Positions 27,085 to 55,172 of a stretch of 64,000 bases of DNA are shown piece by piece. The DNA comes from Macrostomum lignano. Its lineage: Eukaryota. The notes below the pieces were generated by a model, which was given only the letters and a program-made list of their open reading frames with translations, was not told the origin of the DNA and did not search any database. Position numbers and translations under genes: made by a program. Each line of letters opens with the position of its first letter. The stretch's first letter is position 1. The DNA is taken from NCBI GenBank assembly GCA_002269645.1, contig NIVC01002623.1:1-64000 (forward strand), written 5' to 3'.

Positions 27085-27709
27085 ATGAACGCAAAACTGC
27101 TGGCGTATTTCCTCATTTTTGTTCTGATCAGTGACGGCGAACGGGTGGCCGGTTTCGATGTGAACAACATCAATAGCGTCGATGTTGGCAGCGATGGAGT
27201 CAGCGTCACCTCGGACAATGGAAATCCGTTCTATTATGACGAGTGCAGCGGCTCGCTAAGCGGCTTGAGTATTCAAACTGGCTGTCACAGACGGTGGAAG
27301 CCGCTGTTCTACGTGTGCGCAGTGGTTGGCGGAATTGCGGGACTCTTCCTCGTCACAGGCTGCTGTTGTTGCTGCTGCTGCACCTGCTGCAGATCTAAGT
27401 CAGCGACGCCCGTGAGAACCATCAACAATGTGTCTGATGCAGGTTGACTTCGGAGCAGAATTTCTGATCTAGGGGGAGCTGAGGGGTATAAGTGAAAAAG
27501 GCAAATGAGTGAGAAAGGTCCAGCTTATCTATCCAGCTTACTCATTGAGGTAGGCTGAGCTCCAATAATTTCACTCGTGCATGCAGCCTAATCTTTCAAA
27601 ATTCCAGGCAGCAGCCCAACCTCCAGTAGTGGTGATGAGCAGCGTTGCAGCTCCGTCGCAGCCTCATCTGCAGCAGCAGCAGCAGCCACCGCCTCCTCCA
27701 AAGTACTGA
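27085..27709 (+). CDS. Small type I membrane protein A (142 aa): signal, Cys-loop ectodomain, TM, poly-Cys, C-terminal PPPPPKY
   Basis: Exon 1 27085-27411 (109 codons), intron GTGAGA...TTCCAG 27412-27607, exon 2 27608-27709 AAAQPPVVVMSSVAAPSQPHLQQQQQPPPPPKY*. Confidence 0.8.
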
Positions 27710-27903
27710 TTTGAACTGTTCTAAAAAAGCACTATTAGGCTATCCTGTGCAGCAGATATTAACGCTAAATTATAGCATGTACTTTAACCTATTTATTTTA
27801 AAGCTGCAGATGAACTTTACTGCCGTATCGAAATCGAGTCGCATGCGTCACCGTGGTACTTGAGTGCATGCACATTTGGCACCTCAGTTTATACAACCAA
27901 ATA

Positions 27904-28634
27904 CTGGACACCCTTCCTCTGGACACAATCTCCTTGGACACCCTTCCTCTGGACACAATCTCCTTGGACACCCTTCCTCTGGACACAATCTCCTTGGACA
28001 CCCTTCCTCTGGACACAATCTCCTTGGACACCCTTCCTCTGGACACAATCTCCTTGGACACCCTTCCTCTGGACACAATCTCCTTGGACACCCTTCCTCT
28101 GGACACAATCTCCTTGGACACCCTTCCTCTGGACACAATCTCCTTGGACACCCTTCCTCTGGACACAATCTCCTTGGACACCCTTCCTCTGGACACAATC
28201 TCCTTGGACACCCTTCCTCTGGACACAATCTCCTTGGACACCCTTCCTCTGGACACAATCTCCTTGGACACCCTTCCTCTGGACACAATCTCCTTGGACA
28301 CCCTTCCTCTGGACACAATCTCCTTGGACACCCTTCCTCTAGACACAATCTCCTTGGACACCCTTCCTCTGGACACAATCTCCTTGGACACCCTTCCTCT
28401 GGACACAATCTCCTTGGACACCCTTCCTCTGGACACAATCTCCTTGGACACCCTTCCTCTGGACACAATCTCCTTGGACACCCTTCCTCTGGACACAATC
28501 TCCTTGGACACCCTTCCTCTGGACACAATCTCCTTGGACACCCTTCCTCTGGACACAATCTCCTTGGACACCCTTCCTCTGGACACAATCTCCTTGGACA
28601 CCCTTCCTCTGGACACAATCTCCTTGGACACCCA
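27904..28634. repeat. 30-bp near-perfect tandem repeat x~24 (TCCTTGGACACCCTTCCTCTGGACACAATC)
   Basis: Identical 60-nt lines with a single variant near 28341; source of six spurious ORFs. Confidence 0.97.
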
Positions 28635-29469
28635 TCTTCCCTTTTCCGCCTTCTTTTGATTCCTGTGGTGGAAGTAGCTGGCACGATGTACGAGTATACC
28701 GAATCGCGATTTGCTAATGACTCTTTCTTCATTGAAAATCTTGAATGCTTTTCCTAGACAGAAAGCATACAAGTAACAGCCAATTTCATATTATCAGTTG
28801 TCAATTAGTTTCAAGGGCAAGGGCATGTATAATTATTGCTTATTAACAATCAGGAAAATGCAAAAACACTGCATGAGGTAATCGCTATAGTTGCCTTAGT
28901 AAAGTAGAGGTGAGATTCTGTCTGAGTTCACCCTTTCTCGTTCTGACGACTTTGAACAACTAACAGACTCCATACGGCGTGAATGCTTAGTGGAATCCGT
29001 TGGGTAGAAAAGAAAACTTTAGGCGAAATAGTGCGGTGCATATTTGAGGCTCAGTCCCAGTGAAACAAGCAGAGCCATTTCCAGGAAATTGAGTACGAGC
29101 GTACTGCAATACTGCTGAGTACTGGATTTCTATTTCGCGATTTTTACAATGCCGTTGTATTCTAGTGCCACGCGCGTTGCAATACTAAATATTAAATATA
29201 TCCGCGATATATGCTTCGTATATTCTAAATACAGTAACTTAAATGCCCTGCAGGTTTTAAAACATTCTTGCTACCGAAATCTTCCATGGCAAAAGCTAAA
29301 AATACAAAGCACAGGCAGTCAGACAGTTACAACCTTGCGTACTACCTTTGCTCCCTTTTATAAGATAGAATCAATAATACACCTATAAAGAACCACCGCG
29401 CCAGTTCAATTCGGATCCTTATAGATACTTACTGGCAGGTAGACTTTGCGGGACAAAACAATTCACAGT

Positions 29470-29735
29470 TGACAACACCTATTAGACAATTTACAGCCAC
29501 ACCCATTACGCAATTAACAGCCACACCCATTAGGCAATTTACAGCCACATCCATTACGCAATTTACAGCCACACCCATTAGGCAATTTACAGCCACATCC
29601 ATTACGCAATTTACAGCCACACCCATTAGGCAATTTACAGCCACACCCATTCGGCAATTTACAGCCACACTCATTAGGCAATTTACAGCCACACCCATTC
29701 GGCAATTTACAGACAAACCTATTAGACAGTTTACA
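29470..29735. repeat. 24-bp tandem repeat x~11 (ACAGCCACACCCATTAGGCAATTT)
   Basis: Read directly. Confidence 0.9.
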
Positions 29736-30915
29736 GCCAAGCTATCTCCTGTGTCTCAGGCATCTCTTCTACTGATCAATTTGAGAATACTCCTATCCAT
29801 CCGAGTCTCTCCTGTGCCTCAGGTCTCTCTCATTTTCTCCAGTTTCTTCAAATCTCTCCCAGTCTCTCCCGATCTCTCTTAATCTCCCCCAAGCTCTCCG
29901 CAGTCTCCCTCGCTTTCTCTAATTTTCTTCCAGTCTTTCCCAGTGTCTCAAGCCTAGCCCTAGCGGCTCTTCTTTTCAGAATTTTTCGCTTTGTCATTTA
30001 AAAAAATTCCAGCGAAGAAGCAGTTAGTAAAATCGAAAAGTAAAAAAAGTTATAGATAGACCATAGACAAAGCTGCTCTGACTCCGGGAAAAAGACACTA
30101 ATTAGATAGGAGAAAAACATTTTTCACCTTTTTACGAGTCTACTTAAATCGTAGACGTTAATAAAATTAGCCATATAATCGCTGAAAAATTTCCAATCGA
30201 ATGGTACAAAAATGATGCCAAAATTAGTAGGCATTCAAGCTGTAGGTGAAATTTTTTATAAGGTACAGTTTTAGTTAGATTTGTTGGGCTCTACTGTATA
30301 CAAACTTTAAACTCTCGTTTCTGCAGCAGAAAATTTTTGGCAAGGACCACTGTAGTCTTTGATTTTTTGGTAGCTAGGCCTACTCACAAAAGCACTATAA
30401 AATTCGACATAAAAATGTTTCCACTAATACAATAAGACTCAAGAGCTCAGCAAGTAACATGCATTAAAGTCAACCTCATATTTAACTTTTTTCGAAATTG
30501 CATCTTAATCAACTAAAAGGTGACATATATAACGGGGGTCTTTGTCTCAAATGCAGAGCATAAAATCAATCAACGCCACGTCACATGAGGTCTTTAAAAA
30601 ATCTCAATTTCTACCAAAAATTTGCTGATAGACTATTGATAGAATATTGCGGAAACGGAGATGATACTCGTATATTAATATGCGATTGTTAAGCTATTGC
30701 AATAATATTCTGTTACTATCCATTCTCCTTGGATCTGAGAACTGCATTTCTAAACAATCGCGCAAAGGCCCTTCCAGATCCCCTTACGAGAACCCTCTAT
30801 CAGGATAAGAGATTCGACATAAAAGTTGGCGATAAAGTTTGCAGTGTATCTTCAAATTTTCGTTGATCCCCATGCGACACGTATTGACGATTTTGAGCGA
30901 CGAACAGGCTGTAAG

Positions 30916-31677
30916 TTAGAACACGGACAGGCACTCGCAAATGTACTTCCGGTTGAAAGAGCATCCGGCATCATCGACGCCAATCTTGTGACTAGAGTGG
31001 ACAGCAGCGCAGCCCTCACCAGGCAATCCGTTATTCGGCCTCCCGGGCTCCCAGACGTCGGCCCGGATGCTCTCGTTGCAGGCGTCCCAGATCCAGCCTT
31101 CCGTCTTGCCCGCAGAGCCCAGAATCTGGTGGCCACCCAGGTACAAACTCTCCACAGGAATGTTCGACACGTTCTTGATCCACATCAGGTGACGGGACTC
31201 GTCCGAGTCCAGAGCGTCCGCGAACTTCGACAGTCCGGCCTCCTGTCCGCACCGGGAGAGAGCGTCAGCCCAATTGGTCACCAGTGAGGCCGACACCTTG
31301 TATGAGGATCCGAACTGAGAGTAGTCGTATCCGGGTGGGCACAGGCGACCCGGAGCTACTCCAGGTAGCGATCTCACGTACACGGTTACTCGGTGAGTGC
31401 AGTTGGCCACTGACTGCACTCGGTGGCTGCACTTGTCGAACAGGAACAGCTTGCAGAGGCAGTCGCCATCCGGCAGCGAGAAGGCCCGGCAGTTCGGCAT
31501 CTTGGCGCAGTGCAGGCTGCAGGACTGCGGATCGCACGAGCCCCACACGGTGTGGGTGAAGCTGGACGTCACGCAGTCAGCGCCAGAGATCGGGTGGAAA
31601 GTCGCTTTCAGAGAGCCGCAAGTTGGTTCACTTTTTACCACGACACTCAGCGTCAGCAGTAGCAGCAATAGCAGCAT
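30916..31677 (-). CDS. Secreted PAN/Apple + C-type lectin domain protein, 253 aa, intronless
   Basis: Signal MLLLLLLLTLSVVVKS; CSLHCAKMPNCRAFS...C (PAN); CPPGY...NWADALSRC...WEPGRPNN...EGCA...DDAGC...YICE (CTLD). Confidence 0.85.
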   Translation of the reverse strand: MLLLLLLLTLSVVVKSEPTCGSLKATFHPISGADCVTSSFTHTVWGSCDPQSCSLHCAKMPNCRAFSLPDGDCLCKLFLFDKCSHRVQSVANCTHRVTVYVRSLPGVAPGRLCPPGYDYSQFGSSYKVSASLVTNWADALSRCGQEAGLSKFADALDSDESRHLMWIKNVSNIPVESLYLGGHQILGSAGKTEGWIWDACNESIRADVWEPGRPNNGLPGEGCAAVHSSHKIGVDDAGCSFNRKYICECLSVF

Positions 31678-34600: not shown

Positions 34601-34689
34601 TACTTTCGTACAAGGAAATATAGAGATAGCAGGTGAGCACAAGGAGCGGATTGTAAAGGCCAAAAGATGAGAGAAGTACGAGCAACGTA

Positions 34690-35330
34690 CGAAAGCTGCT
34701 GTGTCAACAAGGATGGCCTATCGCCAATCGGACTTCTTCGAGAGAACTCTTCGGGTGTTCCAGGGAGATACGCCGGTTGCTGCTTGTTCTGGTGCTCGAC
34801 TGAATTCCGGACAGGCTGATTGCTGTTGCTGCGAGCGTCGGCCTGGTGGTAAACACGCACAAGACCGTCGCACTGCGTGTCGGACAACATAGAGGCTGTA
34901 CTATTGTGGTGAGGCGCTGACTGACAGGCGATGGAACTTCTGTGATGTCAACAGTTTGTCTACCTCGGTAGTCTGGTTCCCAACGTCTGCGAAGATCCGA
35001 GGCGTCCCATAGGCTGGCTTGCCTGGGCTGTTCTGCTAAGGTTGTCCTGCAGTCTGAAGCCCACCTAACCGCGGCGTTGTTCCGGAAGGTGGTCGAGACT
35101 GTCCTGCTGTACAATGTTGAGACTTTAACGCTGACAGACTCGCTGGAACAGAAAGTTGATGCCACGCACGCACGCCACCTTCAAGATCGGCGACGAGCCA
35201 GCACTCTGACGCTGCGATACCTGCCGTCTGAGCGACCTTCTGCGCCGAAAACACGTACTAACCACAGCCAGTGCAGCTGATGCGTCGACTGCCTGCCTGC
35301 TGGCTAACACCGGCGTCTGCTGCATTTGCA
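34690..35330 (+). mobile_element. Decayed RTE-clade LINE reverse transcriptase fragment
   Basis: Frameshifted motifs VFQGDT (~34755-34771), AASVGLVVNTHKT, FVYLGS (~34958), FRKVVETVLLYNVETLTLT (35080-35136). Confidence 0.65.
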
Positions 35331-35805
35331 TAACAGACCTAAGTTGCACCCTGACACGCTGATCTTGTTTTATAAGCCATAAACGACAGCGCATTTTGTT
35401 GCTTTGTTGCACAACAAAAACCAATCAATTATTCAGTTGGTAAAATAAAACAGATTGCGCTCGTAGAAAACAAAAACGCGCACTTGCAAAAGTTTGAAAA
35501 CAACTTGGTTGTTTATTAAAATTTTCCTCAATTGTGACGTATTTTTAGCCGCTCGTCTACGTATAGAACGGTAAGGAATTCCGGTTATGCAAGACTGCAC
35601 CAATCAATAACAGTAAAATTCACGTTACAGATAAAAAATAATGTTTAACTACGGGCTTCCGAGTAACAAGGATTATACCGGTACATTATGTTTTAGCTTG
35701 AAAAAAAGTACAATACGAGTATTTAATTAATTATAAACATTTTAAAGCTTGAATAAAGTGCAGTTGAGTAAAGTGCAGGATTCACCCAGTTCGGATGCCA
35801 TCAAT

Positions 35806-36937
35806 TCAGGCCTGCAGCATCGGAGCATCATAGCTGGGCCGAGTGACCACGACATGGCTGGTCTGGTTCATCACCTGGAATGAGGAGAGTGGAGCAGCCC
35901 GTTGTCTGACTGGTTCAGCATGTGATTGAGCTGGGTCTGGCAGTGACTGAGCTGGGTCTGTTTAGACAGTGACTGAGTAGGATCTGGTCTGACAGTGACT
36001 GAGTAGGGTCTGGTCTGACAGTGACTGAGTAGGATCTGGTCTGACAGTGACTGAGTAGGGTCTGGTCTGACAGTGACTGAGTAGGATCTGGTCTGACAGT
36101 GACTGAGTAGGGTCTGGTCTGACAGTGACTGAGTAGGGTCTGGTCTGACTGACTGAGTAGGATCTGGTCTGGCAGTTATTGAGTAGGGTCTGGTCTGGCA
36201 GTGACTGAGTATAGGGTCTGGTCTGACAGTGACTGAGTAGGGTCTGGTCTGGCAGTTATTGAGTAGGGCCTGGTCTGGCAGTGACTGAGTATAGGGTCTG
36301 GTCTGGCAGTGACTGAGTAGGGTCTGGTCTGGCAGTGACTGAGTATAGGGTCTGGTCTGGCAGTGACTGAGTATAGGGTCTGGTCTGACAGTGACTGAGT
36401 AGGGTCTGGTCTGACAGTGACTGAGTAGGGTCTGGCAATGACTGAATAGGGTCTGGCAATGACTGAATAGGGTCTGGCAATGACTGAATAGGGTCTGGCA
36501 ATGATTGAGTAGGGTCTGGTCTGGCAATGACCTGAGTAATTGGGTCTGGAAGTGACTGAGTAGGGGTTGGCAGTGACTAAGCGGAGGGGTGAAGCACCCC
36601 AGAGGCGCACCGGTCGGTAGACGGTGCGGTTCTTCCTGCAAGGCGCGCAGCAGCAGCAGCAGCAGCAGGAGAGCAGGAACAGGGCCAGGAGACCTCCGGC
36701 GGCGATGCACACGTAGAACAGCGCCTTCCAGACCCGACGGCAGCCGGTGTCGATGCCCTGCGTTGACACGCCGGCTTTGCACATCTCGTAATAAAACGGG
36801 TTGCCATCGTCTTTCTTAACCTCGATGCTGGCGCCGCTCTTGCCCATATTGAAGTTGATGCCGCTGCCATCGCTGGCGACACCGCTGGCCAGCAGGGCCA
36901 GGACAGCCAGGGCGCAGATATTGAGGCGGCAGAGCAT
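35806..36937 (-). CDS. Small type I membrane protein B (131 aa), paralogue of 27085-27709
   Basis: Exon 1 36937-36611 (109 codons), intron GTGCGC...CTCCTCATTCCAG 36610-35875, exon 2 35874-35806 VMNQTSHVVVTRPSYDAPMLQA*. Shares DxGNPFYYxxC...TGCxRxWKxLFYVC...GG...LFL..C7 with protein A. Confidence 0.8.
35930..36570. repeat. Intronic ~26-bp minisatellite (GAGTAGGGTCTGGTCTGACAGTGACT)
   Basis: Fills the intron of protein B. Confidence 0.9.
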
Positions 36938-38723: not shown

Positions 38724-40503
38724 CTACTTATTAGAGTAGCATTGAAAGCGCGCCGGACCGGACGCAATTTCGTCATTCTTCATGTGCAGATAGAATGATA
38801 TAATGTAGCGATGCGGACCGCGCGGCAGCTGGAGAGGCGACATGAACTCGCCCGACACGATCTGGGTTGGCGAGTCGCCCTCCCGGTCGGGTAGGTACAC
38901 TTCGCAGCTCAGAGGCAAACTGCCGAACTTGCTGTGCGGCTCGACAAGGAGCTGCCTCTCGTTCAGGTGCAATCGGAGCGCCTTGCGGCCATTCTCATTG
39001 CCGCTGGACGAGTTCCCAGTCAGCAGAGAGAAAGAAAAAGTTCCTGCCGAATGGGGACGGGAGAATGCCGAATTATTGGCAGTTATGCAGTCATAAAGCT
39101 CTGTAGAGCTTTCAACTTGGTATACTTTGCCCTTATTTCTGATTATCCATTCTATTGTCCATTGTTCTCTGTTAATGATCCTCTGGTCTATTTTTCCCTG
39201 GTCATGATCCTGTGGTCCATTTTTCCCTGGTCATGATCAGGGACTACTCAAACACCGGGACGGGAAACTAGAATTTTTTTACGAGGCTGGTCTTCTATCA
39301 GCAGTAGAAAATAACCATAGACAATAAAGTAACACAGCATCTCTCTAATGAAAATAATTGCCAGCCAGCCTCGTAAAAAAAATTTAGTTTCCCGTCCCGG
39401 TTTTTGAGTAGTCCCTGGTCATGATCCTCTGGTCTATTTTTCCCTGGTCATGATCCTTTGGTCCATTTTTCCCTGGTCATGATCCTCTGGTCCATTTTTC
39501 CCTGGTCATGATCCTCTGGTCCATTTTTCCCTGATCAATTGTCCTCTGGCCCATTGTTTCCTGATCCGCTGTGTCTACGGATCACCCCTTGCTCGTCAAC
39601 TCTTGTCATGTTCCAACGCACCATTGAGTGGCAAATCTTGCATCTCTCTGCTAAGACGCCGCTTGAGCGACTCGGATCTCTGGCGCACCACAACATGCAT
39701 TGGCAGGCTGCTTTGGTTGACAGCCATTACTCGGTCTGGATGCACTCGCAGGGTGAGCAAACGGTGCCGTCTAGCCTCACTTGTGTTGCTCTGGCAGATG
39801 AAGGAGGCCAGGCGAGTTTGCGGTCCTCTGGTTGTTACCAAAAACCTTTAAAGTCGAGAAAGTATTTCCCTTAGCAAGATAAAGTAAGTTTATTTCTGGA
39901 ATTTGTTAAGAGCCACATCAAGAAAAAACAACAGAAGGCTCACTTGAAATACTTTCCCTGCGAGCGTTCGAAGTGCACTGTCTTCTGAAGAAATCCGCAG
40001 AAGACCTGCCGCTCCGCTAGCTGAGACTCCGTCCGGACTGTATACGGCTTCATCTTCCAGATAATAATCTCCATTCGTTGTTTGAGAAACTTGAGCACTG
40101 GCTTCACCTCGACAAATTCTGTTGACACTTTAATCTGCATAAACTGCTTGTCATCAGCTTCATCCTCGCCAGTTTCCATCGAATACATCCGGTACACGTT
40201 AACATCAGGCTGCAGAGTCAACTGCAGCTGGTCCTCAGTCACCAAGCGGAGTCCGCGGCCTAGGCCAGGTCCATCCAGCCGAATCTGCTGCTCATCCGTG
40301 TTGGTGATCTGCAGGTGGTCATCGAGGATCACAACCTCCACAGCGCAACTGAACGTTGGTACTTCCGCAGTTGAACCGTCGATTTGCGCGTCCGAGTTGC
40401 TGCTAAAGTACTTTTCCGCGACGAGCATGTACACCACGGTGCCTAGCAGGAACAGGAAGATTCCCACCGAGGCAGCGAACACCGCTATGGTCAGTGCGGA
40501 CAT
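38724..40503 (-). CDS. Uncharacterised N-terminally membrane-anchored protein, 3 predicted exons (~374 aa)
   Basis: Exon 1 40503-39944 (TM AVFAASVGIFLFLLGTVVYMLV, donor GTGAGC). Exon 2 39845-39601 (phase 2 in). Exon 3 39043-38724 (polypyrimidine CAG acceptor, phase 1). Phases add to 1125 nt with no stop. The second donor (GTTGAC) is weak. Confidence 0.55.
39175..39535. repeat. 29-bp minisatellite (CTCTGGTCCATTTTTCCCTGGTCATGATC), intronic
   Basis: Units on both sides of the hAT MITE. Confidence 0.85.
39238..39418. mobile_element. hAT-type MITE, 181 bp
   Basis: ~40-bp TIRs CAGGGACTACTCAAACACCGGGACGGGAAACTA / TAGTTTCCCGTCCCGGTTTTTGAGTAGTCCCTG; 8-bp TSD GTCATGAT at 39230-39237 and 39419-39426. 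Confidence 0.9.
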
Positions 40504-41119: not shown

Positions 41120-41775
41120 CAACCACCTCACCTCTCTATCCCAGTATCATCACTCCCAACATCCTCAATCCCAACATCCTCAATCCCAACATCCTCACTC
41201 CCAACATCCTCAATCCCAACATCCTCACTCCCAACATCCTCACTCCCAACATCCTCACTCCCAACATCCTCACTCCCAACATCCTCACTCCCAACATCCT
41301 CACTCCCAACATCCTCACTCCCAACATCCTCACTCCCAACATCCTCACTCCTAATATCCTCACTCCCAACATCCTCACTCCCAAACATTCTCAATCCCAG
41401 CATCCTCTCACTCCCAACATACTCAATCCAAGCATCCTCACTCCCAACATCCTCACTCACAGCATCCTCTCTCCCAGCATCCTCAATCCCAGTGTAATAT
41501 TTTATTCCTTGCCTTAGAGGCAGTCTGAACTGTTAGCAATCGTGACAAATAATTAGCTGAATCATCGTATTGATTTAATGTACGTTCGCTCTCTATGTAC
41601 ATCGCAGGCTTAACTTCAACTTGCATAAATAAAGCGATCACGGCCTCACGGGGCCTTCGTGTTTTTGGGTGCTGCCAAATACCGCGTGTTACACCAGTAT
41701 CCTCACTCCCAACATACTCAATCCAAGCATCCTCACTCCCAACATCCTCAATCCAAGCATCCTCACTCCAATCCT
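41120..41775. repeat. 15-bp tandem repeat (CCCAACATCCTCACT) in two blocks (~41120-41490, ~41695-41775)
   Basis: Read directly; lies just downstream of the GT32 stop. Confidence 0.9.

Positions 41776-42818: not shown

Positions 42819-42820
<2 letters not shown>

Positions 42821-42857
<37 letters not shown>
42821..42857. repeat. (CT)n microsatellite just upstream of the GT32 start
   Basis: Read directly. Confidence 0.9.
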
Positions 42858-42861
<4 letters not shown>

Positions 42862-44150: not shown

Positions 44151-45209
44151 ATGCTTTGTTTCCGGCTTATATTGTCGTTAGCCCTGCTTGCCACTTGGTT
44201 CGGATCTGGAAATGCAGCAAACAAACTCGAAATACTGCGCCAGAGGATTCGCAACGATGAGCGACGGCTGAGCAAGGACTTCAACGCGCTGCAGGCAATG
44301 ATGCTTTCAGGGACCATCAAAAATGCACCTGTGAGAAACTGGGGTCCGAGAGCGACTCAGCGTCCTTATTACAGGCCGCACCCTGTCCTGCCGACAAATG
44401 CACCTGTGAGAAACTGGGGTCCCAGAGCGACTCAGCGTCCTTATTACAGACCGCAGATTGCCATGCCGACAAATGCACCTGTGAGAAACTGGGGTCCCAG
44501 AGCGACTCAGCGTCCTTATTACAGGCCGCACCCTGTCCTGCCGACAAATGCACCTGTGAGAAATTGGGGTCCCAGAGCGACTCAGCGTCCTTATTACAGA
44601 CCGCAGATTGCCATGCCGACAAATGCACCTGTGAGAAACTGGGGTCCCAGAGCGACTCAGCGTCCTTATTACAGACCGCAGATTGCCATGCCGACAAATG
44701 CACCTGGCCCGTCCCAGCGAAAACCTAATTATAATTGGCAGTCTCGTAACAACCCGACCAAAATCACAAATACTAATGGACAAACCGACCGGAATGTCAA
44801 TCGTGTCAAAGCAGGCCGACCAAATGTCGCCAGCACGCCGAGCAGCAAAATCTTCATTCAAAAAACATACAATGTGCACGGCCGTTACCAAGTGACTCAA
44901 ACCGTTCGGAATAGTACAAGTACCAACAGCAGCATTTTTGTGCACTACGTCTGCAACAGTCGGGGCGTCTGCGTCCGCCACTACACCGTAGGCTTCTACT
45001 CCACTGTGTCCGTCGGTGGAGTTGTCCTGCTCATGCTCATTATCTGTGCTGCCGTCATCGTTCGCCGCAGGCGATTGGTTGTTCAGCAGTACTCTGTCCT
45101 GTCTGACACGGATGCTCAGCACATGATGGGTGGCACTATGAGAGTTGGCCCCCTGCCCGGCCAGGGGCTGTCCGTGCAGAGCGACCCGGTGATCGTGGGC
45201 CAAGTCTGA
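44151..45209 (+). CDS. Type I membrane protein C (352 aa) with five 25-aa R/P/Y-rich ectodomain repeats
   Basis: Signal MLCFRLILSLALLATWFGSG; NAPVRNWGPRATQRPYYRP[HPVL/QIAM]PT x5 (75 bp); S/T/N-rich stalk; FVHYVCNSRGVCVRHYTVGFY; TM; RRRR stop-transfer; AATAAA ~45265. Confidence 0.85.
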   Translation: MLCFRLILSLALLATWFGSGNAANKLEILRQRIRNDERRLSKDFNALQAMMLSGTIKNAPVRNWGPRATQRPYYRPHPVLPTNAPVRNWGPRATQRPYYRPQIAMPTNAPVRNWGPRATQRPYYRPHPVLPTNAPVRNWGPRATQRPYYRPQIAMPTNAPVRNWGPRATQRPYYRPQIAMPTNAPGPSQRKPNYNWQSRNNPTKITNTNGQTDRNVNRVKAGRPNVASTPSSKIFIQKTYNVHGRYQVTQTVRNSTSTNSSIFVHYVCNSRGVCVRHYTVGFYSTVSVGGVVLLMLIICAAVIVRRRRLVVQQYSVLSDTDAQHMMGGTMRVGPLPGQGLSVQSDPVIVGQV

Positions 45210-46445: not shown

Positions 46446-48893
46446 GCGGCAGGGGATGAAATTGTAGGAAATCTATAAAGTGTACTGTTTTGAGCCCTAT
46501 AAAGCGGCAAATTCCCCGGTTTTGGTTAAGAGTTGCACTCAAAATCTTTCCGAGTGACTCAAGTTCTTTAAGGCGCTAGCAAAGACCAGCCTTAGGCGAT
46601 CTCTATTTTAAGTCTCTATAAGACCTAGGCAGAACTGCATCGAGATCTTATAAGAAGACAGAGCTTACACACCCTTTACCATCGCCTGACAACAGTACAA
46701 GTACAAAGTTGAATAGGCGAGTGAGAAAATCTTTCACACTTTTAAAGAGTGAAATAAAATGAATGATGCAGAGAAGACACTCTTGCCCTTTATTAATCCT
46801 GCCCGAGCTCGTCATGCAGCTGAGACCTGTTGCTGCAAGTGATGAAAGCCCATGCATGCAGTCAGAATTTGATACATGGGTCTTCTTCGAATTTAATTCA
46901 TTGTTTTTTTCTTAGAGGGCAGAAGGTGATAATGTCACAAAATAATCTCTCGTATTTAGTGGTTTACTAAAATTGCAAAATGCATTATCAAATTTTTGTG
47001 CGTAAAGCTAGTTAATAGTGCTAAAAATAGTTTGGTGAGGGGAAAAGACAAACGAGTGTGGTGATTCCATTATTTTCACTTATTCGATTGTTTTAAGGAA
47101 ACCTGCTCTAGCTTTGTGCCACAGAAGCTTTAAACAATTTTTCAATATTTGATCGTGCTACACTTACGTCCTGATACATGTAAAACGGCAACTTTTAGAT
47201 TTTCTAGGGTCCTTTTGACGGTTTTTACGAAGGAAAAATAGTGCAAAGGCTCATTTACACTACAATCACACTCTTGTATCTTGTACATCAATTTTGATTC
47301 CTTCATGCATTTCAAACGTCGTGAAATTATGTGGCTCATAGATATAGCAGACGTGTGAATGAGCCCTAAACGCACTTGAAATACATGGAATTGTAATATA
47401 AAATTCATTTGTCTAAAGTAAATGACGTTGGAATTTTTTCAAACGTTTCTATGTTTGTTGCAAAGGCTACAAAGACCGATTGTTTTTACTCTTTGGTTTA
47501 TTATAATTGCTAACGAAATTTTAAATTGTTTGTTTCGAGGAAAACTACGCAAAATTTTGTTAGAGTAAGCAAGCAAGCGTACTTAGCACAGAGAGTATTG
47601 TAATAATTTATGGAGTTATTAATTATAGTTATTAAGGCCTTACTAAATTACTAATCCATCAGGCTATTAAACTGTAAAACACACGGAGTTTTAAAATAAG
47701 AATAATAATATAAAATAAAAATAATAATAATAATAATAATAATGTCATATAATGCGTTCAGGATATCATAACATTCACGGGGTGCATGCATCCAAATCGA
47801 GAGAATTCTAGATTGGAGCGTTGGCCGTTGGAGGGTGGCAGAATTCTGAGAATTCTACAATACAAATTTAGAGGCTATAACTAACTGAATTGGGGGTTGA
47901 CCCATGGGGCATGGGCCCTGACCCGACACTTTTTTCCAGATTGGCATTAACATTCAACTAAATGAAGGTGCAAACTTGTGATTGTCTATCAGCATCACCT
48001 ATCTTTTCTTGAGATATAATCCTGTTCCTATAAGCTATCCTAAAATACAAATGCATGCTTTGCCTAGGAAAAAATATTTTAATGAAAAATGGTTTTATTC
48101 CTAATTTTATTTATAATCAGTGGCAGTGTGGCACAACCAGGGGATGGGGGTGGTTGCCCCCTTTTAGGCAGAGACTGGAAAAAAATTAAAGGGGGGACCA
48201 AGCAAATTTTCACCAAAACAGAGCCACCCCTCTGCCCCCCTCCCAGGTCTTTACTTTCCAGAATCTGCCCCCCCCTTAAAAATTTCTGGTTGTGTTACTA
48301 TCTTATAAATATAAGTTATATCTTTATCTTTTATATTTAATTTGTCTAAAAAATTCTATTTGTCATTTAAAATTGAAGGTTATTAGGAAAATTTTTATTT
48401 ATTTATTTCTTATTTATATTTAATTTAACCAATTCAATTTAATAAAAGCCTTTTTAATTATTTACAACATAATTATTATAAAAATGAGTAGTGCTAGGCT
48501 TTATTAAGCCATATATATATATGTATATTACTATTAGGTCTGTGTTAGTTTTGTGTTATGTGTATATATATTTATATTCTTATCTCTTAATGCTATAGGG
48601 CCTTTATTTATTTCCTATTTATAATTGAATTTTAATCAAAATTCTGAAATTATACAGATACATCTTCAATTTTGTTATTTATCCTTTGTTTATTACAAGT
48701 TATACTAGCTAGATAAATATAGCAATCACCCAATATATAATTAAAAGAAGTAGATTTAAAGAATGAAGGTAAAATAATAAAACTTTGAACCAATTTTTGT
48801 TAGATTTGTTTCTTTATTAGTGCTTTCTACTTAAAAAGAAATTTGATAATTTTTAGAATACATTTGAATTTTTTCTTAATTGCATGCAATGAA

Positions 48894-51800
48894 ATGCTTG
48901 CTCAACTTGTTGCACCAATGCTACGGCTTCAGTCTATCTGGAGTAGCCACACTATGATGGCTGCTCTTCCCTTTGCCTCTACTTGTGCCACATCTTTTTA
49001 CCAATCTGCACTCAGACAGAATTCACTTCTGTCTGCTGCGCCAGCATGTCTGAGCTTTGGGCACCAACAGATTAGAGGCCTTAAGTACTATGACAAGTGA
49101 GTTCGAAATTTGCAACTAATTAATTGCAGCAATATATACACTGAAATCTGCCAGAGATTCACCCTGAGATCCACCTTCCCACCCCAGAGATTCACTCTGA
49201 GATCCGCCCTCCCCACCCAGAGATTCACTTAGATCTACCCTCCCCACCCAGAAATTCACTCTGAAATTCGCCCTCCATGCCCTAGAGATTCACTCTGAGA
49301 TCCGCCCTCCCCACCCCAGAGATTCACCCTGAGATCCGCCCTCCACCCAGAGATTCACCGCTGAGATTCACCCTCCCCACCCCAGAGATTCACTCTGAGA
49401 TCCGCCCTCCCCACCCCAGAGATTCACTTAGATCTACCCTCCCCACCCCAGAAATTCACTCTGAAATTCGCCCTCCATGCCCTAGAGATTCACTCTGAGA
49501 TCCGCCCTCCCCACCCCAGAGATTCACCCTGAGATCCGCCCTCCACCCAGAGATTCACCGCTGAGATTCACCCTCCCCACCCCAGAGATTCACTCTGAGA
49601 TCCGCCCTCCCCACCCCAGAGATTCACCCTGAGATCCGCCCTCCCCACCCCAGAGATTCACCGCTGAGATTCACCCTCCCCACCCCAGAGATTCACTCTG
49701 AGATCCGCCCTCCCCACCCCAGAGATTTACTCTGAGATCCGCCCTCCCCACCCCAGAGATTTACTCTGAGATTCACCCTCCCCACCCCAGAGATTCACTC
49801 TGAGATCCGCCCTCCCCACCCCAGAGATTCACCCTGAGATCCGCCCTCCCCACCCCAGAGATTCACCGCTGAGATTCACCCTCCCCACCCCAGAGATTCA
49901 CTCTGAGATCCGCCCTCCCCACCCCAGAGATTTACTCTGAGATCCGCCCTCCCCACCCCAGAGATTTACTCTGAGATTCACCCTCCCCACCCCAGAGATT
50001 TACTCTGAGATCCGCCCTCCCCACCCCAGAGATTTACCCTGAGATCCGCCCTCCCCACCCCAGAGATTTACTCTGAGATCCGCCCTCCCCACCCCAGAGA
50101 TTTACTCTGAGATTCACCCTCCCCACCCCAGAGATTTACTCTGAGATCCGCCCTCCCCACCCCAGAGATTTACCCTGAGATCCGCCCTCCCCACCCCAGA
50201 GATTTACTCTGAGATCCGCCCTCCCCACCCCAGAGATTTACTCTGAGATCCGCCCTCCCCACCCCAGAGATTCACTCTGAGATCCGCCCTCCCCACCCAG
50301 AGATTCACCGCTGAGATTCACCCTCCCCACCCCAGAGATTCACTCTGAGATCCGCCCTCCCCACCCCAGAGATTTACTCTGAGATCCGCCCTCCCCACCC
50401 CAGAGATTTACTCTGAGATTCACCCTCCCCACCCCAGAGATTTACTCTGAGATCCGCCCTCCCCACCCCAGAGATTCACCGCTGAAATTCACCCTCCCCA
50501 CCCCAGAGATTCACTCTGAGATCCGCCCTCCCCACCCCAGAGATTCACCGCTGAAATTCACCCTCCCCACCCCAGAGATTCACTCTGAGATCCGCCCTCC
50601 CCACCCCAGAGATTCACTCTGAGATCCGCCCTCCCCACCCCAGAGATTCACCGCTGAAATTCACCCTCCCCACCCCAGAGATTCACTCTGAGATCCGCCC
50701 TCCCCACCCCAGAGATTCACCGCTGAAATTCACCCTCCCCACCCCAGAGATTCACTCTGAGATCCGCCCTCCCCACCCCAGAGATTCACCGCTGAAATTC
50801 ACCCTCCCCACCCTAGAGATTCACTCTGAGATCCGCCCTCCCCACCCCAGAGATTTACCCTGAGATCCGCCCTCCCCACCCCAGAGATTTACTCTGAGAT
50901 CCGCCCTCCCCACCTCAGAGATTCACTCTGAGATCCGCCCTCCCCACCCCAGAGATTCACTCTGAGATTCACCCTCCCCACCCCAGAGATTCACCGCTGA
51001 AATTCACCCTCCCCATCCCAGAGATTCACTCTGAGATCCGCCCTCCCCACCCCAGAGATTTACTCTGAGATCCGCCCTCCCCACCCCAGAGATTTACTCT
51101 GAGATCCGCCCTCCCCACCCAGAGATTTACTCTGAGATCCGCCCTCCCCACCCCAGAGATTTACTCTGAGATCCGCCCTCCACCCAGAGATTCACCGCTG
51201 AGATTCACCCTCCCCACCCCAGAGATTCACTCTGAGATCCGCCCTCCCCACCCCAGAGATTCACTCTGAGATCCGCCCTCCCCACCCCAGAGATTCACCG
51301 CTGAAATTCACCCTCCCCACCCCAGAGATTCACTCTGAGATCCGCCCTCCCCACCCCAGAGATTTACTCTGAGATCCGCCCTCCCCACCCAGAGATTTAC
51401 TCTGAGATCCGCCCTCCCCACCCCAGAGATTTACTCTGAGATCCGCCCTCCCCACCCTAGAGATTTACTCTGAGATCCGCCCTCCCCACCCCAGAGATTT
51501 ACCCTGAGATCCGCCCTCCCCACCCCAGAGATTTACTCTGAGATCCGCCCTCCCCACCTCAGAGATTCACTCTGAGATCCGCCCTCCCCACCCCAGAGAT
51601 TCACTCTGAGATCCGCCCTCCCCACCCCAGAGATTCACCGCTGAAATTCACCCTCCCCACCCCAGAGATTCACTCTGAGATCCGCCCTCCCCACCCCAGA
51701 GATTTACTCTGAGATCCGCCCTCCCCACCCCAGAGATTTACTCTGAGATCCGCCCTCCCCACCCCAGAGATTTACTCTGAGATCCGCCCTCCCCACCCCA

Positions 51801-52063
51801 GAGATTTACTCTGAGATCCGCCCTCCACCCAGAGATTCACCGCTGAGATTCACCCTCCCCACCCCAGAGATTCACTATGAGATCCGCCCTCCCCACCCAG
51901 GCTGCGCAAGCGCTGCCGGCACTGCTACTTCGAACGCAACCCGGCGGGCTTCCTGACCATCCAGTGCCCGATGCACCCGAGGCACAAGCAGCAGGAGAAG
52001 CCGCGGCCGCCCAGTCCCAAGTGGGCCTTCAAGCGGCACATTTACAAAAGCGTCAACTGGTGA
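48894..52063 (+). CDS. MRPL36: Mitochondrial ribosomal protein L36 (bL36m), 121 aa, two exons
   Basis: Exon 1 48894-49096 (transit-peptide-like, ends RGLKYYD-AA|gtgagt); exon 2 51901-52063 (cccag|G LRKRCRHCYFERNPAGFLTIQCPMHPRHKQQ...). Phase 2 matches; CxxC...C.xH zinc ribbon and HPRHKQ are diagnostic of bL36. Confidence 0.9.
49150..51900. repeat. ~34-bp satellite x~80 filling the MRPL36 intron (CTGAGATCCGCCCTCCCCACCCCAGAGATTCACT)
   Basis: Read directly; variants of 31-35 bp. Confidence 0.95.
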
Positions 52064-52265
52064 CCGAATTGCAGGCATCTTAGTCATCAACTGCTCATGA
52101 TTATAACTGAATTCAGCTTGCAGTTCTAGTTTATCATTATTATTTATTATGTTATAAAAAACTTAAATATAAATCGTACGAAAATGTACATTTCTTATAT
52201 AGATGCATTCACGCCTGAAAAAAACGTTCCCGTTTGACTTTGATGACTTGTTTTTTTATTTCAAA

Positions 52266-54629
52266 TTATTTATTATTGGCGAAACCGCCAGGTGGCTGTT
52301 TGTCATTGTCATTTGAAATGCTTTCAATATGGCTAACGGATAAGCTACATAAAACCAACACCACCACCAGCAGCCCATAGAGTGAACCCAACAACACCAC
52401 AACTAGCCCATAGAGTGAACCCAACACCACCACAACTAGCCCATAGAGTGAACCCAACACCACCACAACTAGCCCATCGAGTGAACCCAACACCACCACA
52501 ACTAGCCCATAGAGTGAACCCAACACCACCACAACTAGCCCATAGAGTGAACCCAACAACACCACAACTAGCCCATCGAGTGAACCCAACACCACCACAA
52601 CTAGCCCATAGAGTGAACCCAACACCACCACAACTAGCCCATCGAGTGAACCCAACAACACCACAACTAGCCCATAGAGTGAACCCAACAACACCACAAC
52701 TAGCCTATAGAGTGAACCCAACACCACCACAACTAGCCCATAGAGTGAACCCAACACCACCACAACTAGCCCATAGAGTGAACCCAACACCACCACAACT
52801 AGCCCATAGAGTGAACCCAACAACACCACAACTAGCCTATAGAGTGAACCCAACACCACCACAACTAGCTCATAGAGTGAACCCAACAACACCACAACTA
52901 GCCCATCGAGTGAACCCAACACCACCACAACTAGCCCATAGAGTGAACCCAACAACACCACAACTAGCCTATAGAGTGAACCCAACACCACCACAACTAG
53001 CTCATAGAGTGAACCCAACACCACCACCAGAGTTCATAGAGTGAACCCAACACCAACCAGCAGCCAGTAGAGTGAACCCAACACCACCACCAGAAGTCCA
53101 ACGAGTGAACCCAACACCACCACCAGAAGTCCAACGAGTGAACCCAACACCACCACCAGAAGTCCAACGAGTGAACCCAACAGCACCAGATCAAGTCCAA
53201 CGAGTGAACCCAACAGCACCAGATCAAGTCCAACGAGTGAACCCAACAGCACCAGATCAAGTCCAACGAGTGAACCCAACACCACCACCAGAAGTCCAAC
53301 GAGTGAACCCAACAGCACCAGATCAAGTCCAACGAGTGAACCCAACAGCACCAGATCAAGTCCAACGAGTGAACCCAACAGCACCAGATCAAGTCCAACG
53401 AGTGAACCCAACAGCACCAGATCAAGTCCAACGAGTGAACCCAACACCACCACCAGAAGTCCAACGAGTGAACCCAACAGCACCAGATCAAGTCCATCGA
53501 GTGAACCCAACAGCACCAGATCAAGTCCAACGAGTGAACCCAGCAGCACCAAAAGTCCAACGAGTGAACCCAACAGCACCAGATCAAGTCCAACGAGTGA
53601 ACCCAACACCACCACCAGAAGTCCAACGAGTGAACCCAACAGCACCAGATCAAGTCCAACGAGTGAACCCAACAGCACCAGATCAAGTCCAACGAGTGAA
53701 CCCAACAGCACCAGATCAAGTCCAACGAGTGAACCCAACAGCACCAGATCAAGTCCAACGAGTGAACCCAACACCACCACCAGAAGTCCAACGAGTGAAC
53801 CCAACAGCACCAGATCAAGTCCAACGAGTGAACCCAACAGCACCAGATCAAGTCCAACGAGTGAACCCAACAGCACCAGATCAAGTCCAACGAGTGAACC
53901 CAACAGCACCAGATCAAGTCCAACGAGTGAACCCAACAGCACCAGATCAAGTCCAACGAGTGAACCCAACACCACCACCAGAAGTCCAACGAGTGAACCC
54001 AACAGCACCAGATCAAGTCCATCGAGTGAACCCAACAGCACCAGATCAAGTCCAACGAGTGAACCCAGCAGCACCAAAAGTCCATCGAGTGAACCTAATG
54101 CCGTTCGTCATCTCTGCGTATCTCTCGGCCTTCTGTCGCTATCGCGGCGAGATCTTTAACTTGCTGATGCTTTTAGAATCGATTAAATTTTGTTAATTTG
54201 ATTCAATTCCTATAAAAAATAATGCGCAGCAAAGCTCTTTATGTTGGCATTTTGGCATTTTTGTCAGACTCAGACTTTATACTGGCATTTAGCTGTTTTC
54301 CATAGACAAAAAAGCTGTTCTCTGCTTTGAGCCAACTCTGTTCGTCCCCGTCTTTCTCGTCTCACTCGCAAGCCTAGTCGTGCATCAATTGATACTTACT
54401 TGCGTTCTAAACGATACGGACTTTGAAAACGATTCAGGCTGTGGGAATAAAGACAAAACAGACTCACCGTCTCGAAGATGCGCTATTGCGAGATGTCAGG
54501 TAAAGTGCAATTTTTGTCTGAGCCTAATCATATTCTAAACATTAATAAAAATTTTGGCCGTTTTAGCGCCCCAGGTACGAGTATAGTACACAGAAAACAT
54601 ACTTAGCAAAAAACGCTTTGAAACTACTT
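52266..54629 (-). other. Candidate 3' end of a spliced gene with micro-exons (27, 15, 39 nt) and a terminal exon
   Basis: Exons 54629-54603 (CAG/GTATGT), 54482-54468 (TAG/GTGAGT), 54438-54400 (CAG/GTAAGT), 52344-52266 (TAG acceptor, stop, AATAAA). All phase 2 and open only in that phase. No start codon found. Confidence 0.4.
52360..54095. repeat. 33-bp satellite, two sub-arrays (…CACAACTAGCCCATAG… to ~53040; …AGATCAAGTCCAACG… after ~53070)
   Basis: Shared core AGTGAACCCAACA; degenerate units at the junction. Confidence 0.95.
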
Positions 54630-54719
54630 CTGGGAGAAATCAGTCAGTAGTATAGAGATGGCCATAGACAATACATGTAAATACGGAGCCAGCCAGCTAA
54701 ATATGGTTCACAAGGCACA

Positions 54720-55172
54720 ATGTTTCCCGCGGCAGCCGTCACTGGCCTCCTGATGACGCTGCTGTGGGCCCAGCTGGCCGCCGCTGCTCCCATCTCCATC
54801 GAGATCGACAACCCGCCGCTGCTCTTGTCGCCCGGCAACAGCCAGCCGCTGAGTCCGAGCCGTCTGAAATCGTTGCGTCTGGTGCAGATGTACCGCAGCC
54901 GGGAAACGCTGTTCGTGAAGGAGATCTGCATCGGCTGCGGCCCCGACCGCATCTGCACCCGGCGCTTCCGGCCGGCCTTCTTCGGCCTGCTGGCCTCCAC
55001 GTCCATAGCGGTGTTCGTCATCGTCAGTCTCGTGCTGGCCACCCTGGTGAAGCGGCGGCGCCTGCAGGCCAAGCAGTTCGCCAGACCCGCTGCGTCCAAG
55101 CAGGCAGCTGAGCTCGTCTGCGGCGATGCGGCTGCTCAGGACTGCCCGGTGAAACCCGCGCTGAACTGCTGA
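54720..55172 (+). CDS. Small type I membrane protein D (150 aa)
   Basis: Signal MFPAAAVTGLLMTLLWAQLAAA; FVKEICIGCGPDRICTRRFRPAFF; TM GLLASTSIAVFVIVSLVLATLV; KRRR; GC-rich codon usage. Confidence 0.8.
   Translation: MFPAAAVTGLLMTLLWAQLAAAAPISIEIDNPPLLLSPGNSQPLSPSRLKSLRLVQMYRSRETLFVKEICIGCGPDRICTRRFRPAFFGLLASTSIAVFVIVSLVLATLVKRRRLQAKQFARPAASKQAAELVCGDAAAQDCPVKPALNC

What the first reader, a model, noticed from the sequence alone, without database searches (positions are those of the whole stretch)
27085..55172. Four dispersed small membrane proteins share an unrecognised juxtamembrane Cys-loop signature: a candidate new cell-surface family
Seen: proteins A (27085+), B (36937-), C (44151+) and D (54720+) all have signal peptide + single TM and, directly before the TM, F-x4-C-loop-C-x-R-x-[WYF]-x3-F-[YF]. 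A: FYYDEC-x12-CHRRWKPLFY; B: FYYEMC-x12-CRRVWKALFY; C: FVHYVC-x5-CVRHYTVGFY; D: FVKEIC-x8-CTRRFRPAFF. A, B and C also have GG at the same distance into the TM. Everything else differs: the ectodomain ranges from a short beta-like segment to five R/P/Y repeats, and tails are poly-Cys + PY or RRRR/KRRR. Knowledge: Shisa/WBP1/VOPP1-like proteins have a Cys-rich ectodomain, TM, Cys cluster and PY tail but use six ectodomain cysteines, so this two-Cys module does not match them. Inference: a fixed disulfide-loop/TM module carrying variable ectodomains, clustered with an LRR receptor, a lectin and a glycosyltransferase, could be a lineage-specific recognition, adhesion or receptor-chaperone system.
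Basis: partly seen in the sequence, partly recalled or inferred. Interest (0 to 1): 0.8.

Follow-up and report, generated by a model that had tools for sequence, protein, structure and literature searches.

The report
Flatworm-only family of small membrane proteins
Four neighbouring genes of the flatworm Macrostomum lignano encode small single-pass membrane proteins that share a two-cysteine hairpin motif directly above the membrane anchor; they look like an undescribed family found only in this lineage, two of them resemble known PY-motif trafficking adaptors, and their function is untested.

Summary
The window is Macrostomum lignano contig NIVC01002623.1, positions 1-64000. All four ORFs exist at the stated starts, and all correspond to annotated genes.

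- **Motif:** F-x4-C-loop-C-x-R-x-[WYF]-x3-F-[YF] occurs exactly four times in the six-frame translation, each time directly before a transmembrane (TM) segment.
- **A and B:** certain paralogues. They are 49% identical, share the intron position and are under purifying selection. Two further relatives turned up in public RNA-seq assemblies.
- **C and D:** related to each other (BLASTP E 4e-7).
- **The link between the two pairs:** weaker but not chance. An HMM built only from A/B-type proteins ranks C and D as the best non-self hits among 742 window ORF segments (E 0.002 and 0.02).
- **Distribution:** an exhaustive HMMER search of 1.84 billion proteins found no members outside this group.
- **Known families:** Pfam, PDB and Foldseek assign none.
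- **Structure:** AlphaFold models the A/B motif as a beta-hairpin with the two cysteines cross-strand, running into the TM helix.
- **Tails:** A/B-type tails carry a poly-Cys cluster and a PPxY or PSYD motif, as in Shisa-like, Comm and PRRG adaptors.

B's apparent repeat tail is an intron.

The parts
27085..27411 (+). Gene A (BOX15_Mlig034499g2), exon 1. Encodes the signal peptide, a short ectodomain, the Cys-hairpin motif (27229-27312), the TM (about 27301-27381), the poly-Cys cluster and RSK.
   Evidence: ORF. Splice model reproduces P0001 exactly. Motif.
27608..27709 (+). Gene A, exon 2. Encodes a Pro/Gln-rich cytoplasmic tail ending in PPPPPKY* (a PPxY motif). The intron is 27412-27607, after CDS nt 327.
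36611..36937 (-). Gene B (BOX15_Mlig019594), exon 1. Encodes the signal peptide, ectodomain, Cys-hairpin motif (36713-36796), TM, CCCCCCCAPC and RKNR.
35806..35874 (-). Gene B, exon 2. Encodes the tail VMNQTSHVVVTRPSYDAPMLQA*. The intron is 35875-36610, after CDS nt 327 as in A, and contains a 26-nt tandem array at 35934-36565.
   Evidence: (P0009).
44151..45209 (+). Gene C (BOX15_Mlig029483g1), a single ORF of 352 aa. It has a signal peptide, five 25-aa Pro/Arg/Tyr repeats (44321-44706), NST and NSS sequons, the motif at 44937-44999, a TM (about 45003-45065), RRRR, and a tail containing YSVL.
54478..54499 (+). Gene D (BOX15_Mlig027048g3), 22-nt first exon (MRYCEMS). The intron is 54500-54735.
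54736..55172 (+). Gene D, exon 2. Encodes the signal peptide, a Pro/Leu/Ser-rich ectodomain, the motif at 54912-54983 (three Cys), the TM, KRRR and the tail.

Best explanation
A, B, C and D are products of local gene duplication. They form a small family of type I single-pass membrane proteins restricted to Macrostomum or close relatives.

**The shared part** is a membrane-anchoring module with four elements:
- a short beta-hairpin stapled by one disulfide (F-x4-C ... C-x-R);
- a second strand that runs through an aromatic/basic collar ([WYF]-x3-F-[YF]);
- a direct continuation into the TM helix, which carries GG in A, B and C;
- a basic stop-transfer cluster.

Different N-terminal ectodomains and cytoplasmic tails have been attached to this module.

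**A/B subfamily.** It adds a cytoplasmic run of 7-9 cysteines, probably palmitoylated, and a C-terminal PY-type motif (A PPKY; P0010 PPGYDVPML; B RPSYDAPML). I infer that these proteins work like the short PY-motif transmembrane adaptors (Shisa-like/WBP1/CYYR1, Comm, PRRG4). In that model the ecto/TM module contacts a membrane partner, and the tail recruits a Nedd4-type WW-domain ubiquitin ligase to control the partner's trafficking or degradation.

**C/D subfamily.** It lacks the poly-Cys and PY motifs. C carries a repeat-rich, probably glycosylated ectodomain and a YxxPhi sorting signal. These two are more likely surface or stalk proteins that re-use the same anchor.

**Shown:** the gene models, the motif, A/B paralogy, purifying selection, lineage restriction and the absence of any known-family match.

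**Inferred:** the disulfide, the palmitoylation, WW-ligase binding, homology of the C/D pair with the A/B pair, and every functional statement.
For: **Organism and gene models:**

**A/B are paralogues**
- BLASTP gives 49% identity over 63 aa, E 3e-12.
- Both introns lie after CDS nt 327.
- Two further members, P0010 and P0011, come from Logan RNA-seq assemblies and keep the motif, the GG(G), the poly-Cys cluster and the tail Tyr.
- dN/dS for B vs P0010 is 0.37 at dS 0.83.

**C/D are related:** BLASTP E 4e-7 over 64 aa.

**The link between the pairs**
- The A/B-only HMM ranks C and D top among non-self hits in the window (E 0.0023 and 0.022) and aligns from the second Cys through the TM.
- Leave-one-out HMMs give per-sequence P of 1e-5 to 1e-6.
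- hhalign gives 68% probability, P 4.7e-5, in the same register.
- MAFFT recovers the motif unaided.
- The upstream F-x4-C is not used by the HMM alignment. By my estimate it adds roughly a further 1e-2 per protein.

**Synteny:** all four genes are present, in the same order where DNA was fetched, in the homeologous contig NIVC01000094.1.

**Structure:** the AlphaFold model of A has strands 50-59 and 62-71 (pLDDT about 75), so Cys54 and Cys67 are cross-strand partners, followed by helix 73-102.

**PY-adaptor analogy**
- PPKY in A.
- The tail alignment has an invariant Tyr.
- Comm GLPSYDEAL and PRRG4 GLPSYEQAV are functional extended PY motifs that bind Nedd4 (PMC5578492).
Against: - The A/B-C/D link is short, and part of it is generic TM hydrophobicity.
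- An HMM of the A/B ectodomain alone does not detect C or D, and BLASTP sees nothing.
- No orthologues of C or D are available to show that their motif is under constraint.
- D's ectodomain model is unusable.
- A canonical [PL]PxY is present in A and P0010 but not in B (RPSY) or P0011 (AKY).
- No expression, localisation or interaction data exist.
- A's model is only of moderate confidence (mean pLDDT 61) and comes from a 4-sequence alignment.
Confidence: 0.5

Rival explanations
1. Only A/B and their two RNA-seq relatives form a family. C and D, whether or not they are related to each other, resemble A/B by chance or by convergence. The region just outside a TM is generally rich in aromatic and basic residues and in ectodomain cysteines, and the motif was defined after all four had been seen.
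For: - No BLASTP similarity between C or D and B.
- The ectodomain-only HMM misses both.
- At proteome scale the cross-scores of 10-15 bits would not be significant.
- hhalign probability is only 68%.
- Loop lengths differ (5, 8 and 12-13 residues), and C/D have different tails and no shared intron.
Against: - C and D are the two best non-self hits of an A/B-only HMM among 742 ORF segments. They beat the TM segments of two GPCRs and other membrane proteins in the window.
- The register is identical, and the upstream F-x4-C also fits.
- All four lie within 28 kb and have the same topology.
- Shuffles reach the real score in 1% of trials or fewer for the module HMMs.
Confidence: 0.25
2. The A/B proteins are divergent true members of the Shisa-like (STMC6) superfamily (Shisa, WBP1, VOPP1, CYYR1, TMEM92) that have lost four of the six ectodomain cysteines.
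For: The overall plan is the same: a short Cys-containing ectodomain, an aromatic-rich TM entry, membrane-proximal cysteines and a PY tail. The family is described in PMC5578492.
Against: - The defining C*C*CC*CC pattern is absent: there are two ectodomain Cys.
- No Shisa, WBP-1 or CYYR1 Pfam hit even at E<=10, for any of the six proteins.
- The exhaustive profile search found no such relatives.
Confidence: 0.1
3. The A/B proteins are cellular counterparts of the orthoreovirus p10 FAST fusion proteins and act as small cell-cell fusogens or membrane-active proteins.
For: - PF07204 (Orthoreo_P10) is the top, and in two of three cases the only, Pfam hit for B, P0010 and P0011, at 15-17.7 bits and E 0.003-0.024.
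- Eight of nine within-segment shuffles lose the hit.
- The architecture runs in parallel. p10 has a two-Cys ectodomain loop of 11 residues, a membrane-proximal region, a TM, palmitoylated cysteines next to the TM and a polybasic motif (PMC3961370; PMC7830690).
Against: - All scores are below the gathering cut-off of 21.4, and A, C and D do not hit.
- The match is confined to the TM, Cys and basic core. Isolated ectodomains and tails give nothing.
- A similar 15-bit match to a signal peptide followed by Cys arises by chance in PDB.
- Foldseek against viral models gives nothing, and no relatives were found in IMG/VR.
- The proteins have signal peptides and longer ectodomains, unlike FAST proteins.
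- The loops contain charged residues.
Confidence: 0.05
4. The A/B proteins are FXYD-like regulators of the Na,K-ATPase. The lead is NPFYYD in A followed by a GG-containing TM and membrane-proximal Cys and basic residues.
For: Only the resemblance of the PFYYD string in A and the general plan of a small type I protein. This is my own recollection of the FXYD signature, so it is a lead and not a test.
Against: - The Asp is not conserved: B has PFYYE, P0010 PFFYE and P0011 PFYTV.
- A 22-residue Cys hairpin separates the string from the TM.
- No PF02038 hit at E<=10.
- No FXYD chain appears in PDB sequence searches, although many are deposited.
Confidence: 0.02

Closest known systems
Shisa-like / STMC6 transmembrane adaptors (Shisa, WBP1, VOPP1, CYYR1, TMEM92)
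   Same: Short type I single-pass proteins with a Cys-containing ectodomain directly above an aromatic-rich TM entry, cysteines at the cytoplasmic face, and a Pro-rich tail carrying a PPxY motif (seen in A and P0010).
   Different: The ectodomain has two cysteines forming one hairpin instead of the defining six-Cys C*C*CC*CC pattern. There is no Pfam or profile similarity. C and D lack PY motifs and the poly-Cys cluster.
Commissureless / PRRG4 PY-motif sorting adaptors
   Same: Short single-pass proteins whose function depends on an extended PY motif with an acidic and a hydrophobic residue (LPSYDEAL, LPSYEQAV). B has RPSYDAPML and P0010 has PPGYDVPML.
   Different: No sequence relationship outside the motif. 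Comm lacks ectodomain cysteines and PRRG proteins have a Gla domain. B and P0011 do not have the canonical [LP]P before x-Y.
Orthoreovirus p10 FAST proteins (Pfam PF07204)
   Same: About 100-160 aa. A two-Cys ectodomain loop of similar length (12-13 residues against 11), an aromatic membrane-proximal region, a Gly-rich TM, cysteines next to the TM, a polybasic cluster and a disordered tail. There is weak sub-threshold Pfam similarity over the TM/Cys/basic core.
   Different: Scores fall below the family cut-off. The ectodomain and loop sequences are unrelated. Here the loop abuts the TM, whereas in p10 it is N-terminal and separated from the TM by a conserved motif. These proteins have a signal peptide. 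There are 7-9 cysteines rather than two. This is a cellular, intron-containing gene.
FXYD ion-transport regulators
   Same: Small type I proteins. A carries a PFYYD string, and there are glycines in the TM and Cys/basic residues after it.
   Different: The signature is not conserved across the family and is separated from the TM by the Cys hairpin. No profile or PDB match.

Membership tests
Shisa-like / STMC6 (Shisa, WBP1, VOPP1, CYYR1, TMEM92) | Six ectodomain cysteines in the pattern C*C*CC*CC (PMC5578492, citing Pei & Grishin 2012) | tested here: not met
   The mature ectodomains of A, B, P0010 and C have two Cys, and D has three.
Shisa-like / STMC6 (Shisa, WBP1, VOPP1, CYYR1, TMEM92) | Short single-pass type I topology | tested here: met
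   An N-terminal hydrophobic segment plus one central TM, with basic residues after the TM. The model shows a TM helix at 73-102 in A and 87-122 in D.
Shisa-like / STMC6 (Shisa, WBP1, VOPP1, CYYR1, TMEM92) | Cytoplasmic PPxY/LPxY motifs | tested here: inconclusive
   A has PPKY and P0010 has PPGY. B has RPSY and P0011 has AKY, neither canonical. C and D have none.
Shisa-like / STMC6 (Shisa, WBP1, VOPP1, CYYR1, TMEM92) | Match to the family profiles (Pfam Shisa, WBP-1, CYYR1) | tested here: not met
   None listed at E<=10 for A, B, C, D, P0010 or P0011.
Orthoreovirus p10 FAST (PF07204) | Score at or above the Pfam gathering cut-off (21.4 bits) | tested here: not met
   B scores 15.0, P0010 17.4 and P0011 17.7 bits. 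A, C and D have no hit.
Orthoreovirus p10 FAST (PF07204) | N-terminal cystine-loop fusion peptide (two Cys, 11-residue hydrophobic patch) followed by a conserved motif/MPER before the TM (PMC3961370) | tested here: not met
   A two-Cys loop of 12-13 residues exists, but it abuts the TM, contains charged residues in B and P0011, and the isolated ectodomains give no PF07204 match.
Orthoreovirus p10 FAST (PF07204) | No cleavable signal peptide, and an ectodomain of about 40 residues or fewer | tested here: not met
   An N-terminal hydrophobic signal-like segment is present, and the region between it and the TM is about 50-70 residues.
Orthoreovirus p10 FAST (PF07204) | Membrane-proximal cytoplasmic cysteines plus a polybasic motif | tested here: met
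   CCCCCCC..C followed by RSK, RKNR, RKKR or RRK in the A/B-type proteins. Absent in C and D, which have a basic cluster only.
Orthoreovirus p10 FAST (PF07204) | Induces cell-cell fusion | not testable with these tools
   Needs expression in cells.
FXYD (PF02038) | Invariant PFxYD signature directly before the TM, with conserved TM glycines (signature recalled from my own knowledge) | tested here: not met
   PFYYD occurs in A only, while B has PFYYE, P0010 PFFYE and P0011 PFYTV. The string lies about 22 residues upstream of the TM.
FXYD (PF02038) | Match to the family profile or to solved FXYD chains | tested here: not met
   No PF02038 hit at E<=10. No FXYD chain in the PDB searches.
Proposed new family (A-D) | Signal peptide, then F-x4-C-x(5-13)-C-x-R-x-[WYF]-x3-F-[YF], then the TM at once, then a basic cluster | tested here: met
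   All four window proteins fit. P0010 and P0011 fit the C-x-R-x-W-x3-F-Y half and the F-x4-C half.
Proposed new family (A-D) | Statistically supported common ancestry of all members | tested here: inconclusive
   A/B is certain and C/D probable. The link between the pairs rests on in-window E 0.002 and 0.02, hhalign 68%, and no BLASTP signal.

The most novel reading that the evidence does not exclude
A-D define an undescribed protein module, a disulfide-stapled beta-hairpin fused directly to a TM helix. It would act as an autonomous membrane-proximal unit for clustering or partner recognition. The poly-Cys/polybasic A/B members would be cellular analogues, or even relatives, of reovirus p10-type FAST proteins, meaning small membrane-active proteins able to promote cell-cell fusion in a flatworm.
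Probability: 0.05. Interest if true: 0.75.

Novelty: new variant of a known kind. Interest (0 to 1): 0.3.

Why it matters
If the four genes are one family, they show a compact anchor (Cys hairpin, aromatic collar, TM) being re-used under very different ectodomains and tails within 28 kb of a recently duplicated flatworm genome.

The A/B branch would add a two-Cys variant to the short PY-motif adaptors that set the surface levels of receptors (Shisa, Comm, PRRG4, WBP1L). M. lignano is open to transgenesis and RNAi, so this can be tested.

The practical weight is modest. The family is tiny, lineage-restricted and without functional data. Orphan families of small membrane proteins are common in flatworm genomes. 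Only the low-probability fusogen reading would interest people outside the field.

Tried and rejected
**Database and family searches**
- Word-indexed searches with A, C and D returned only M. lignano copies.
- The exhaustive profile search returned, beyond the family, only translated tandem repeats (P0012-P0016). I inspected P0012, P0014 and P0015 and discarded them.
- Pfam hits to TMEM52, TM_ErbB1, CcmD, TMEM119, PRD1_P5_C and DAP10 are all far below cut-off and confined to the TM, so I treat them as noise.
- PDB sequence searches gave only noise: alphavirus E2, Rh, SlyB, TniQ and TRAP-delta.
- Foldseek of the A model against BFVD and PDB gave no hit better than E 0.1.
- An IMG/VR scan for A/B relatives found none.

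**Specific leads**
- FXYD: rejected. See the membership test.
- p10 FAST: kept only as a low-probability analogy, after the shuffle controls and the scans of separate segments.

**Analyses that could not deliver**
- The structure of D, for superposition on A, was unusable in the ectodomain.
- Expression data: the gene IDs are absent from the searchable full texts and from the supplements of four M. lignano papers.
- The source organisms of SRR28338165 and SRR30276815 could not be identified.
- The ectodomain-only HMM cannot bridge to C or D, probably because the loop lengths differ.
- Pei & Grishin 2012 is not held in the library.

Full report
**Identity of the window and gene models.** A search with ORF A returned a 100%-identical Macrostomum lignano protein, BOX15_Mlig034499g2. 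The contig look-ups place the window at NIVC01002623.1:1-64000 of assembly GCA_002269645.1. All four ORFs correspond to annotated genes.
- **A** has two exons, 27085-27411 and 27608-27709, and encodes 142 aa.
- **B** has two exons, 36937-36611 and 35874-35806 on the minus strand, and encodes 131 aa.
- Both introns follow CDS nucleotide 327.
- **C** is a single ORF of 352 aa, 44151-45209.
- **D** has a 22-nt first exon at 54478, and its main exon starts at 54736.

**Check of the observation.**
All are the stated ones, and each is followed directly by a hydrophobic segment.
- Hydropathy and the models give a signal-like N-terminus and one TM in each protein, with basic residues after the TM.
- MAFFT, unsupervised, aligns the four with invariant F, C, C, R, F.
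- GG lies five residues after F-Y in A, B and C, but not in D.

**Relationships.**
- **A and B** are clear paralogues. They are 49% identical over 63 aa (E 3e-12) and share the intron position.
- **Further A/B-type members.** The one exhaustive HMMER search was run with the four-sequence profile against 1.84 billion representatives. It found twelve proteins at E<=0.001. Seven are real: A, B, C, two D models, and two new A/B-type proteins from Logan assemblies of RNA-seq runs (P0010 and P0011). The other five are translated satellite repeats.
- **What the A/B-type members conserve**: D-x-x-N-P-F, C-x12/13-C-x-R-x-W-K-x-L-F-Y, GG(G), CCxCCCC..C-R, and a Tyr near the C-terminus.
- **Selection.** B against P0010 gives dS 0.83 and dN/dS 0.37, so the genes are under purifying selection.
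- **C and D** resemble each other (BLASTP E 4e-7 over 64 aa). They show no BLASTP similarity to B.
- **Independent test of the link.** I built an HMM from the four A/B-type modules only and searched all 742 stop-to-stop segments of at least 40 aa in the window. C and D are the best non-self hits, at E 0.0023 and 0.022, with the next hit at 0.49.
- **Other support.** Leave-one-out HMMs give per-sequence P of about 1e-5 to 1e-6. hhalign of the A/B family against C+D gives 68% probability. For the module HMMs, shuffling the 35 juxtamembrane residues reaches the real score in 0.3-1% of trials.
- **Limits.** An ectodomain-only HMM fails, and at proteome scale the cross-scores alone would not be significant.

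I conclude that the four-way relationship is probable, at about two in three, but not proven.

**Structure.**
- With the four-sequence alignment, AlphaFold models A at mean pLDDT 61, and about 75 over residues 40-90.
- The model has two beta-hairpins. The second has strands 50-59 and 62-71, which makes Cys54 and Cys67 direct cross-strand partners. It leads into helix 73-102.
- Foldseek finds nothing in BFVD or PDB.

**Comparison with known families.**
- No Pfam family reaches its threshold, and PDB sequence searches give noise.
- **Shisa-like.** These proteins are defined by six ectodomain cysteines in a C*C*CC*CC pattern plus PY motifs (PMC5578492). The cysteine pattern is not met here.
- **PY tails.** A ends in PPKY, P0010 has PPGYDVPML and B has RPSYDAPML. 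These resemble the extended PY motifs of Comm (LPSYDEAL) and PRRG4 that bind Nedd4.
- **Orthoreo_P10.** An unexpected sub-threshold Pfam hit appears in three of the four A/B-type proteins, at 15-17.7 bits against a cut-off of 21.4. It depends on residue order. It is confined to the TM/Cys/basic core, and the ectodomains and tails alone give nothing.
- **How p10 differs.** p10 also has a two-Cys ectodomain loop, palmitoylated cysteines and a polybasic motif (PMC3961370). But it lacks a signal peptide, and its loop is N-terminal and separated from the TM by a conserved motif. I treat this as an architectural analogy.
- **FXYD.** This lead (PFYYD in A) fails, because the Asp is not conserved and no profile or PDB match exists.

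**Most likely mechanism.** The shared module is a disulfide-stapled hairpin sitting on the membrane surface. Its conserved Arg and aromatic residues lie at the interface, and it is fused rigidly to the TM helix.
- In A/B, the cytoplasmic poly-Cys run is a likely multi-palmitoylation site, and the PY-type tail is a likely docking site for Nedd4-family WW domains. Together these give a trafficking or degradation adaptor of the Shisa/Comm/PRRG4 kind.
- C pairs the same anchor with a Pro/Arg/Tyr repeat ectodomain whose copy number differs between homeologues: 5 here, 11 in NIVC01000094.1 and 3 in the annotated model. It also has two N-glycosylation sequons and a YSVL sorting motif.
- D has a short Pro/Leu/Ser-rich ectodomain.
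- All of these functional statements are inference.

**Context.** The neighbours are two class C GPCR genes, an LRR protein, a weak C-type lectin, a weak DXD glycosyltransferase and an ADP-ribosyl-cyclase-like ORF. These are ordinary eukaryotic genes separated by large tandem arrays. Nothing ties them functionally to A-D. The same four genes recur in the homeologous contig, as expected for this neopolyploid genome.

**Verdict.** The interpretation as a new small family is plausible and partly supported. The proposed functional system is not supported. This is a lineage-restricted variant of the short Cys-containing, PY-tailed single-pass adaptors, and of modest interest.

Noticed in passing
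window 44321-44706; L002 1018-2529: The 75-nt coding repeat of gene C (25 aa, NAPVRNWGPRATQRPYYRP..PT) varies in copy number. There are 5 copies here, 11 in the homeologous contig NIVC01000094.1, and 3 in the annotated protein P0003, whose model skips 150 nt.
   Followed up: partly
window 35934-36565: A 26-nt tandem array of about 25 copies fills most of B's intron. It is open in frame with exon 1, so the unspliced ORF mimics a long R-P-Y-S repeat tail.
   Followed up: yes
window 27905-28633, 29475-29739, 41146-41491, 49151-51898, 52355-54095, 55222-55889: Large, near-perfect tandem arrays with periods of 30, 24, 15, 34, 33/66/99 and 8 nt separate the genes. They produce long spurious ORFs in several frames and strong GC-skew excursions at 48-54 kb.
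   Followed up: partly
window 10436-12573 (-) and 18688-20874 (+): Two divergently oriented class C (metabotropic-glutamate-type) GPCR genes, with ANF_receptor, NCD3G and 7tm_3 domains.
   Followed up: no
window 39940-40503 (-): A 187-aa ORF with an N-terminal TM anchor (type II-like) and no Pfam match.
   Followed up: no
window 56859-57761 (-): A 300-aa ORF with a partial ADP-ribosyl cyclase (Rib_hydrolayse) match, E 2e-7 for the whole protein.
   Followed up: no
P0006, P0007, P0008 (UniProt models from the older M. lignano assembly): Several database models of gene D are frame-shifted or fused to translated satellite repeats. One of them is named 'Toxoplasma gondii family B protein', which is an annotation artefact.
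   Followed up: partly
window 48891-52063 (+) (L003 4414-7586): An annotated 122-aa gene between C and D, with only a weak Ribosomal_L36 hit. Its span overlaps the 34-nt satellite at 49151-51898, so the model may be spurious.
   Followed up: no
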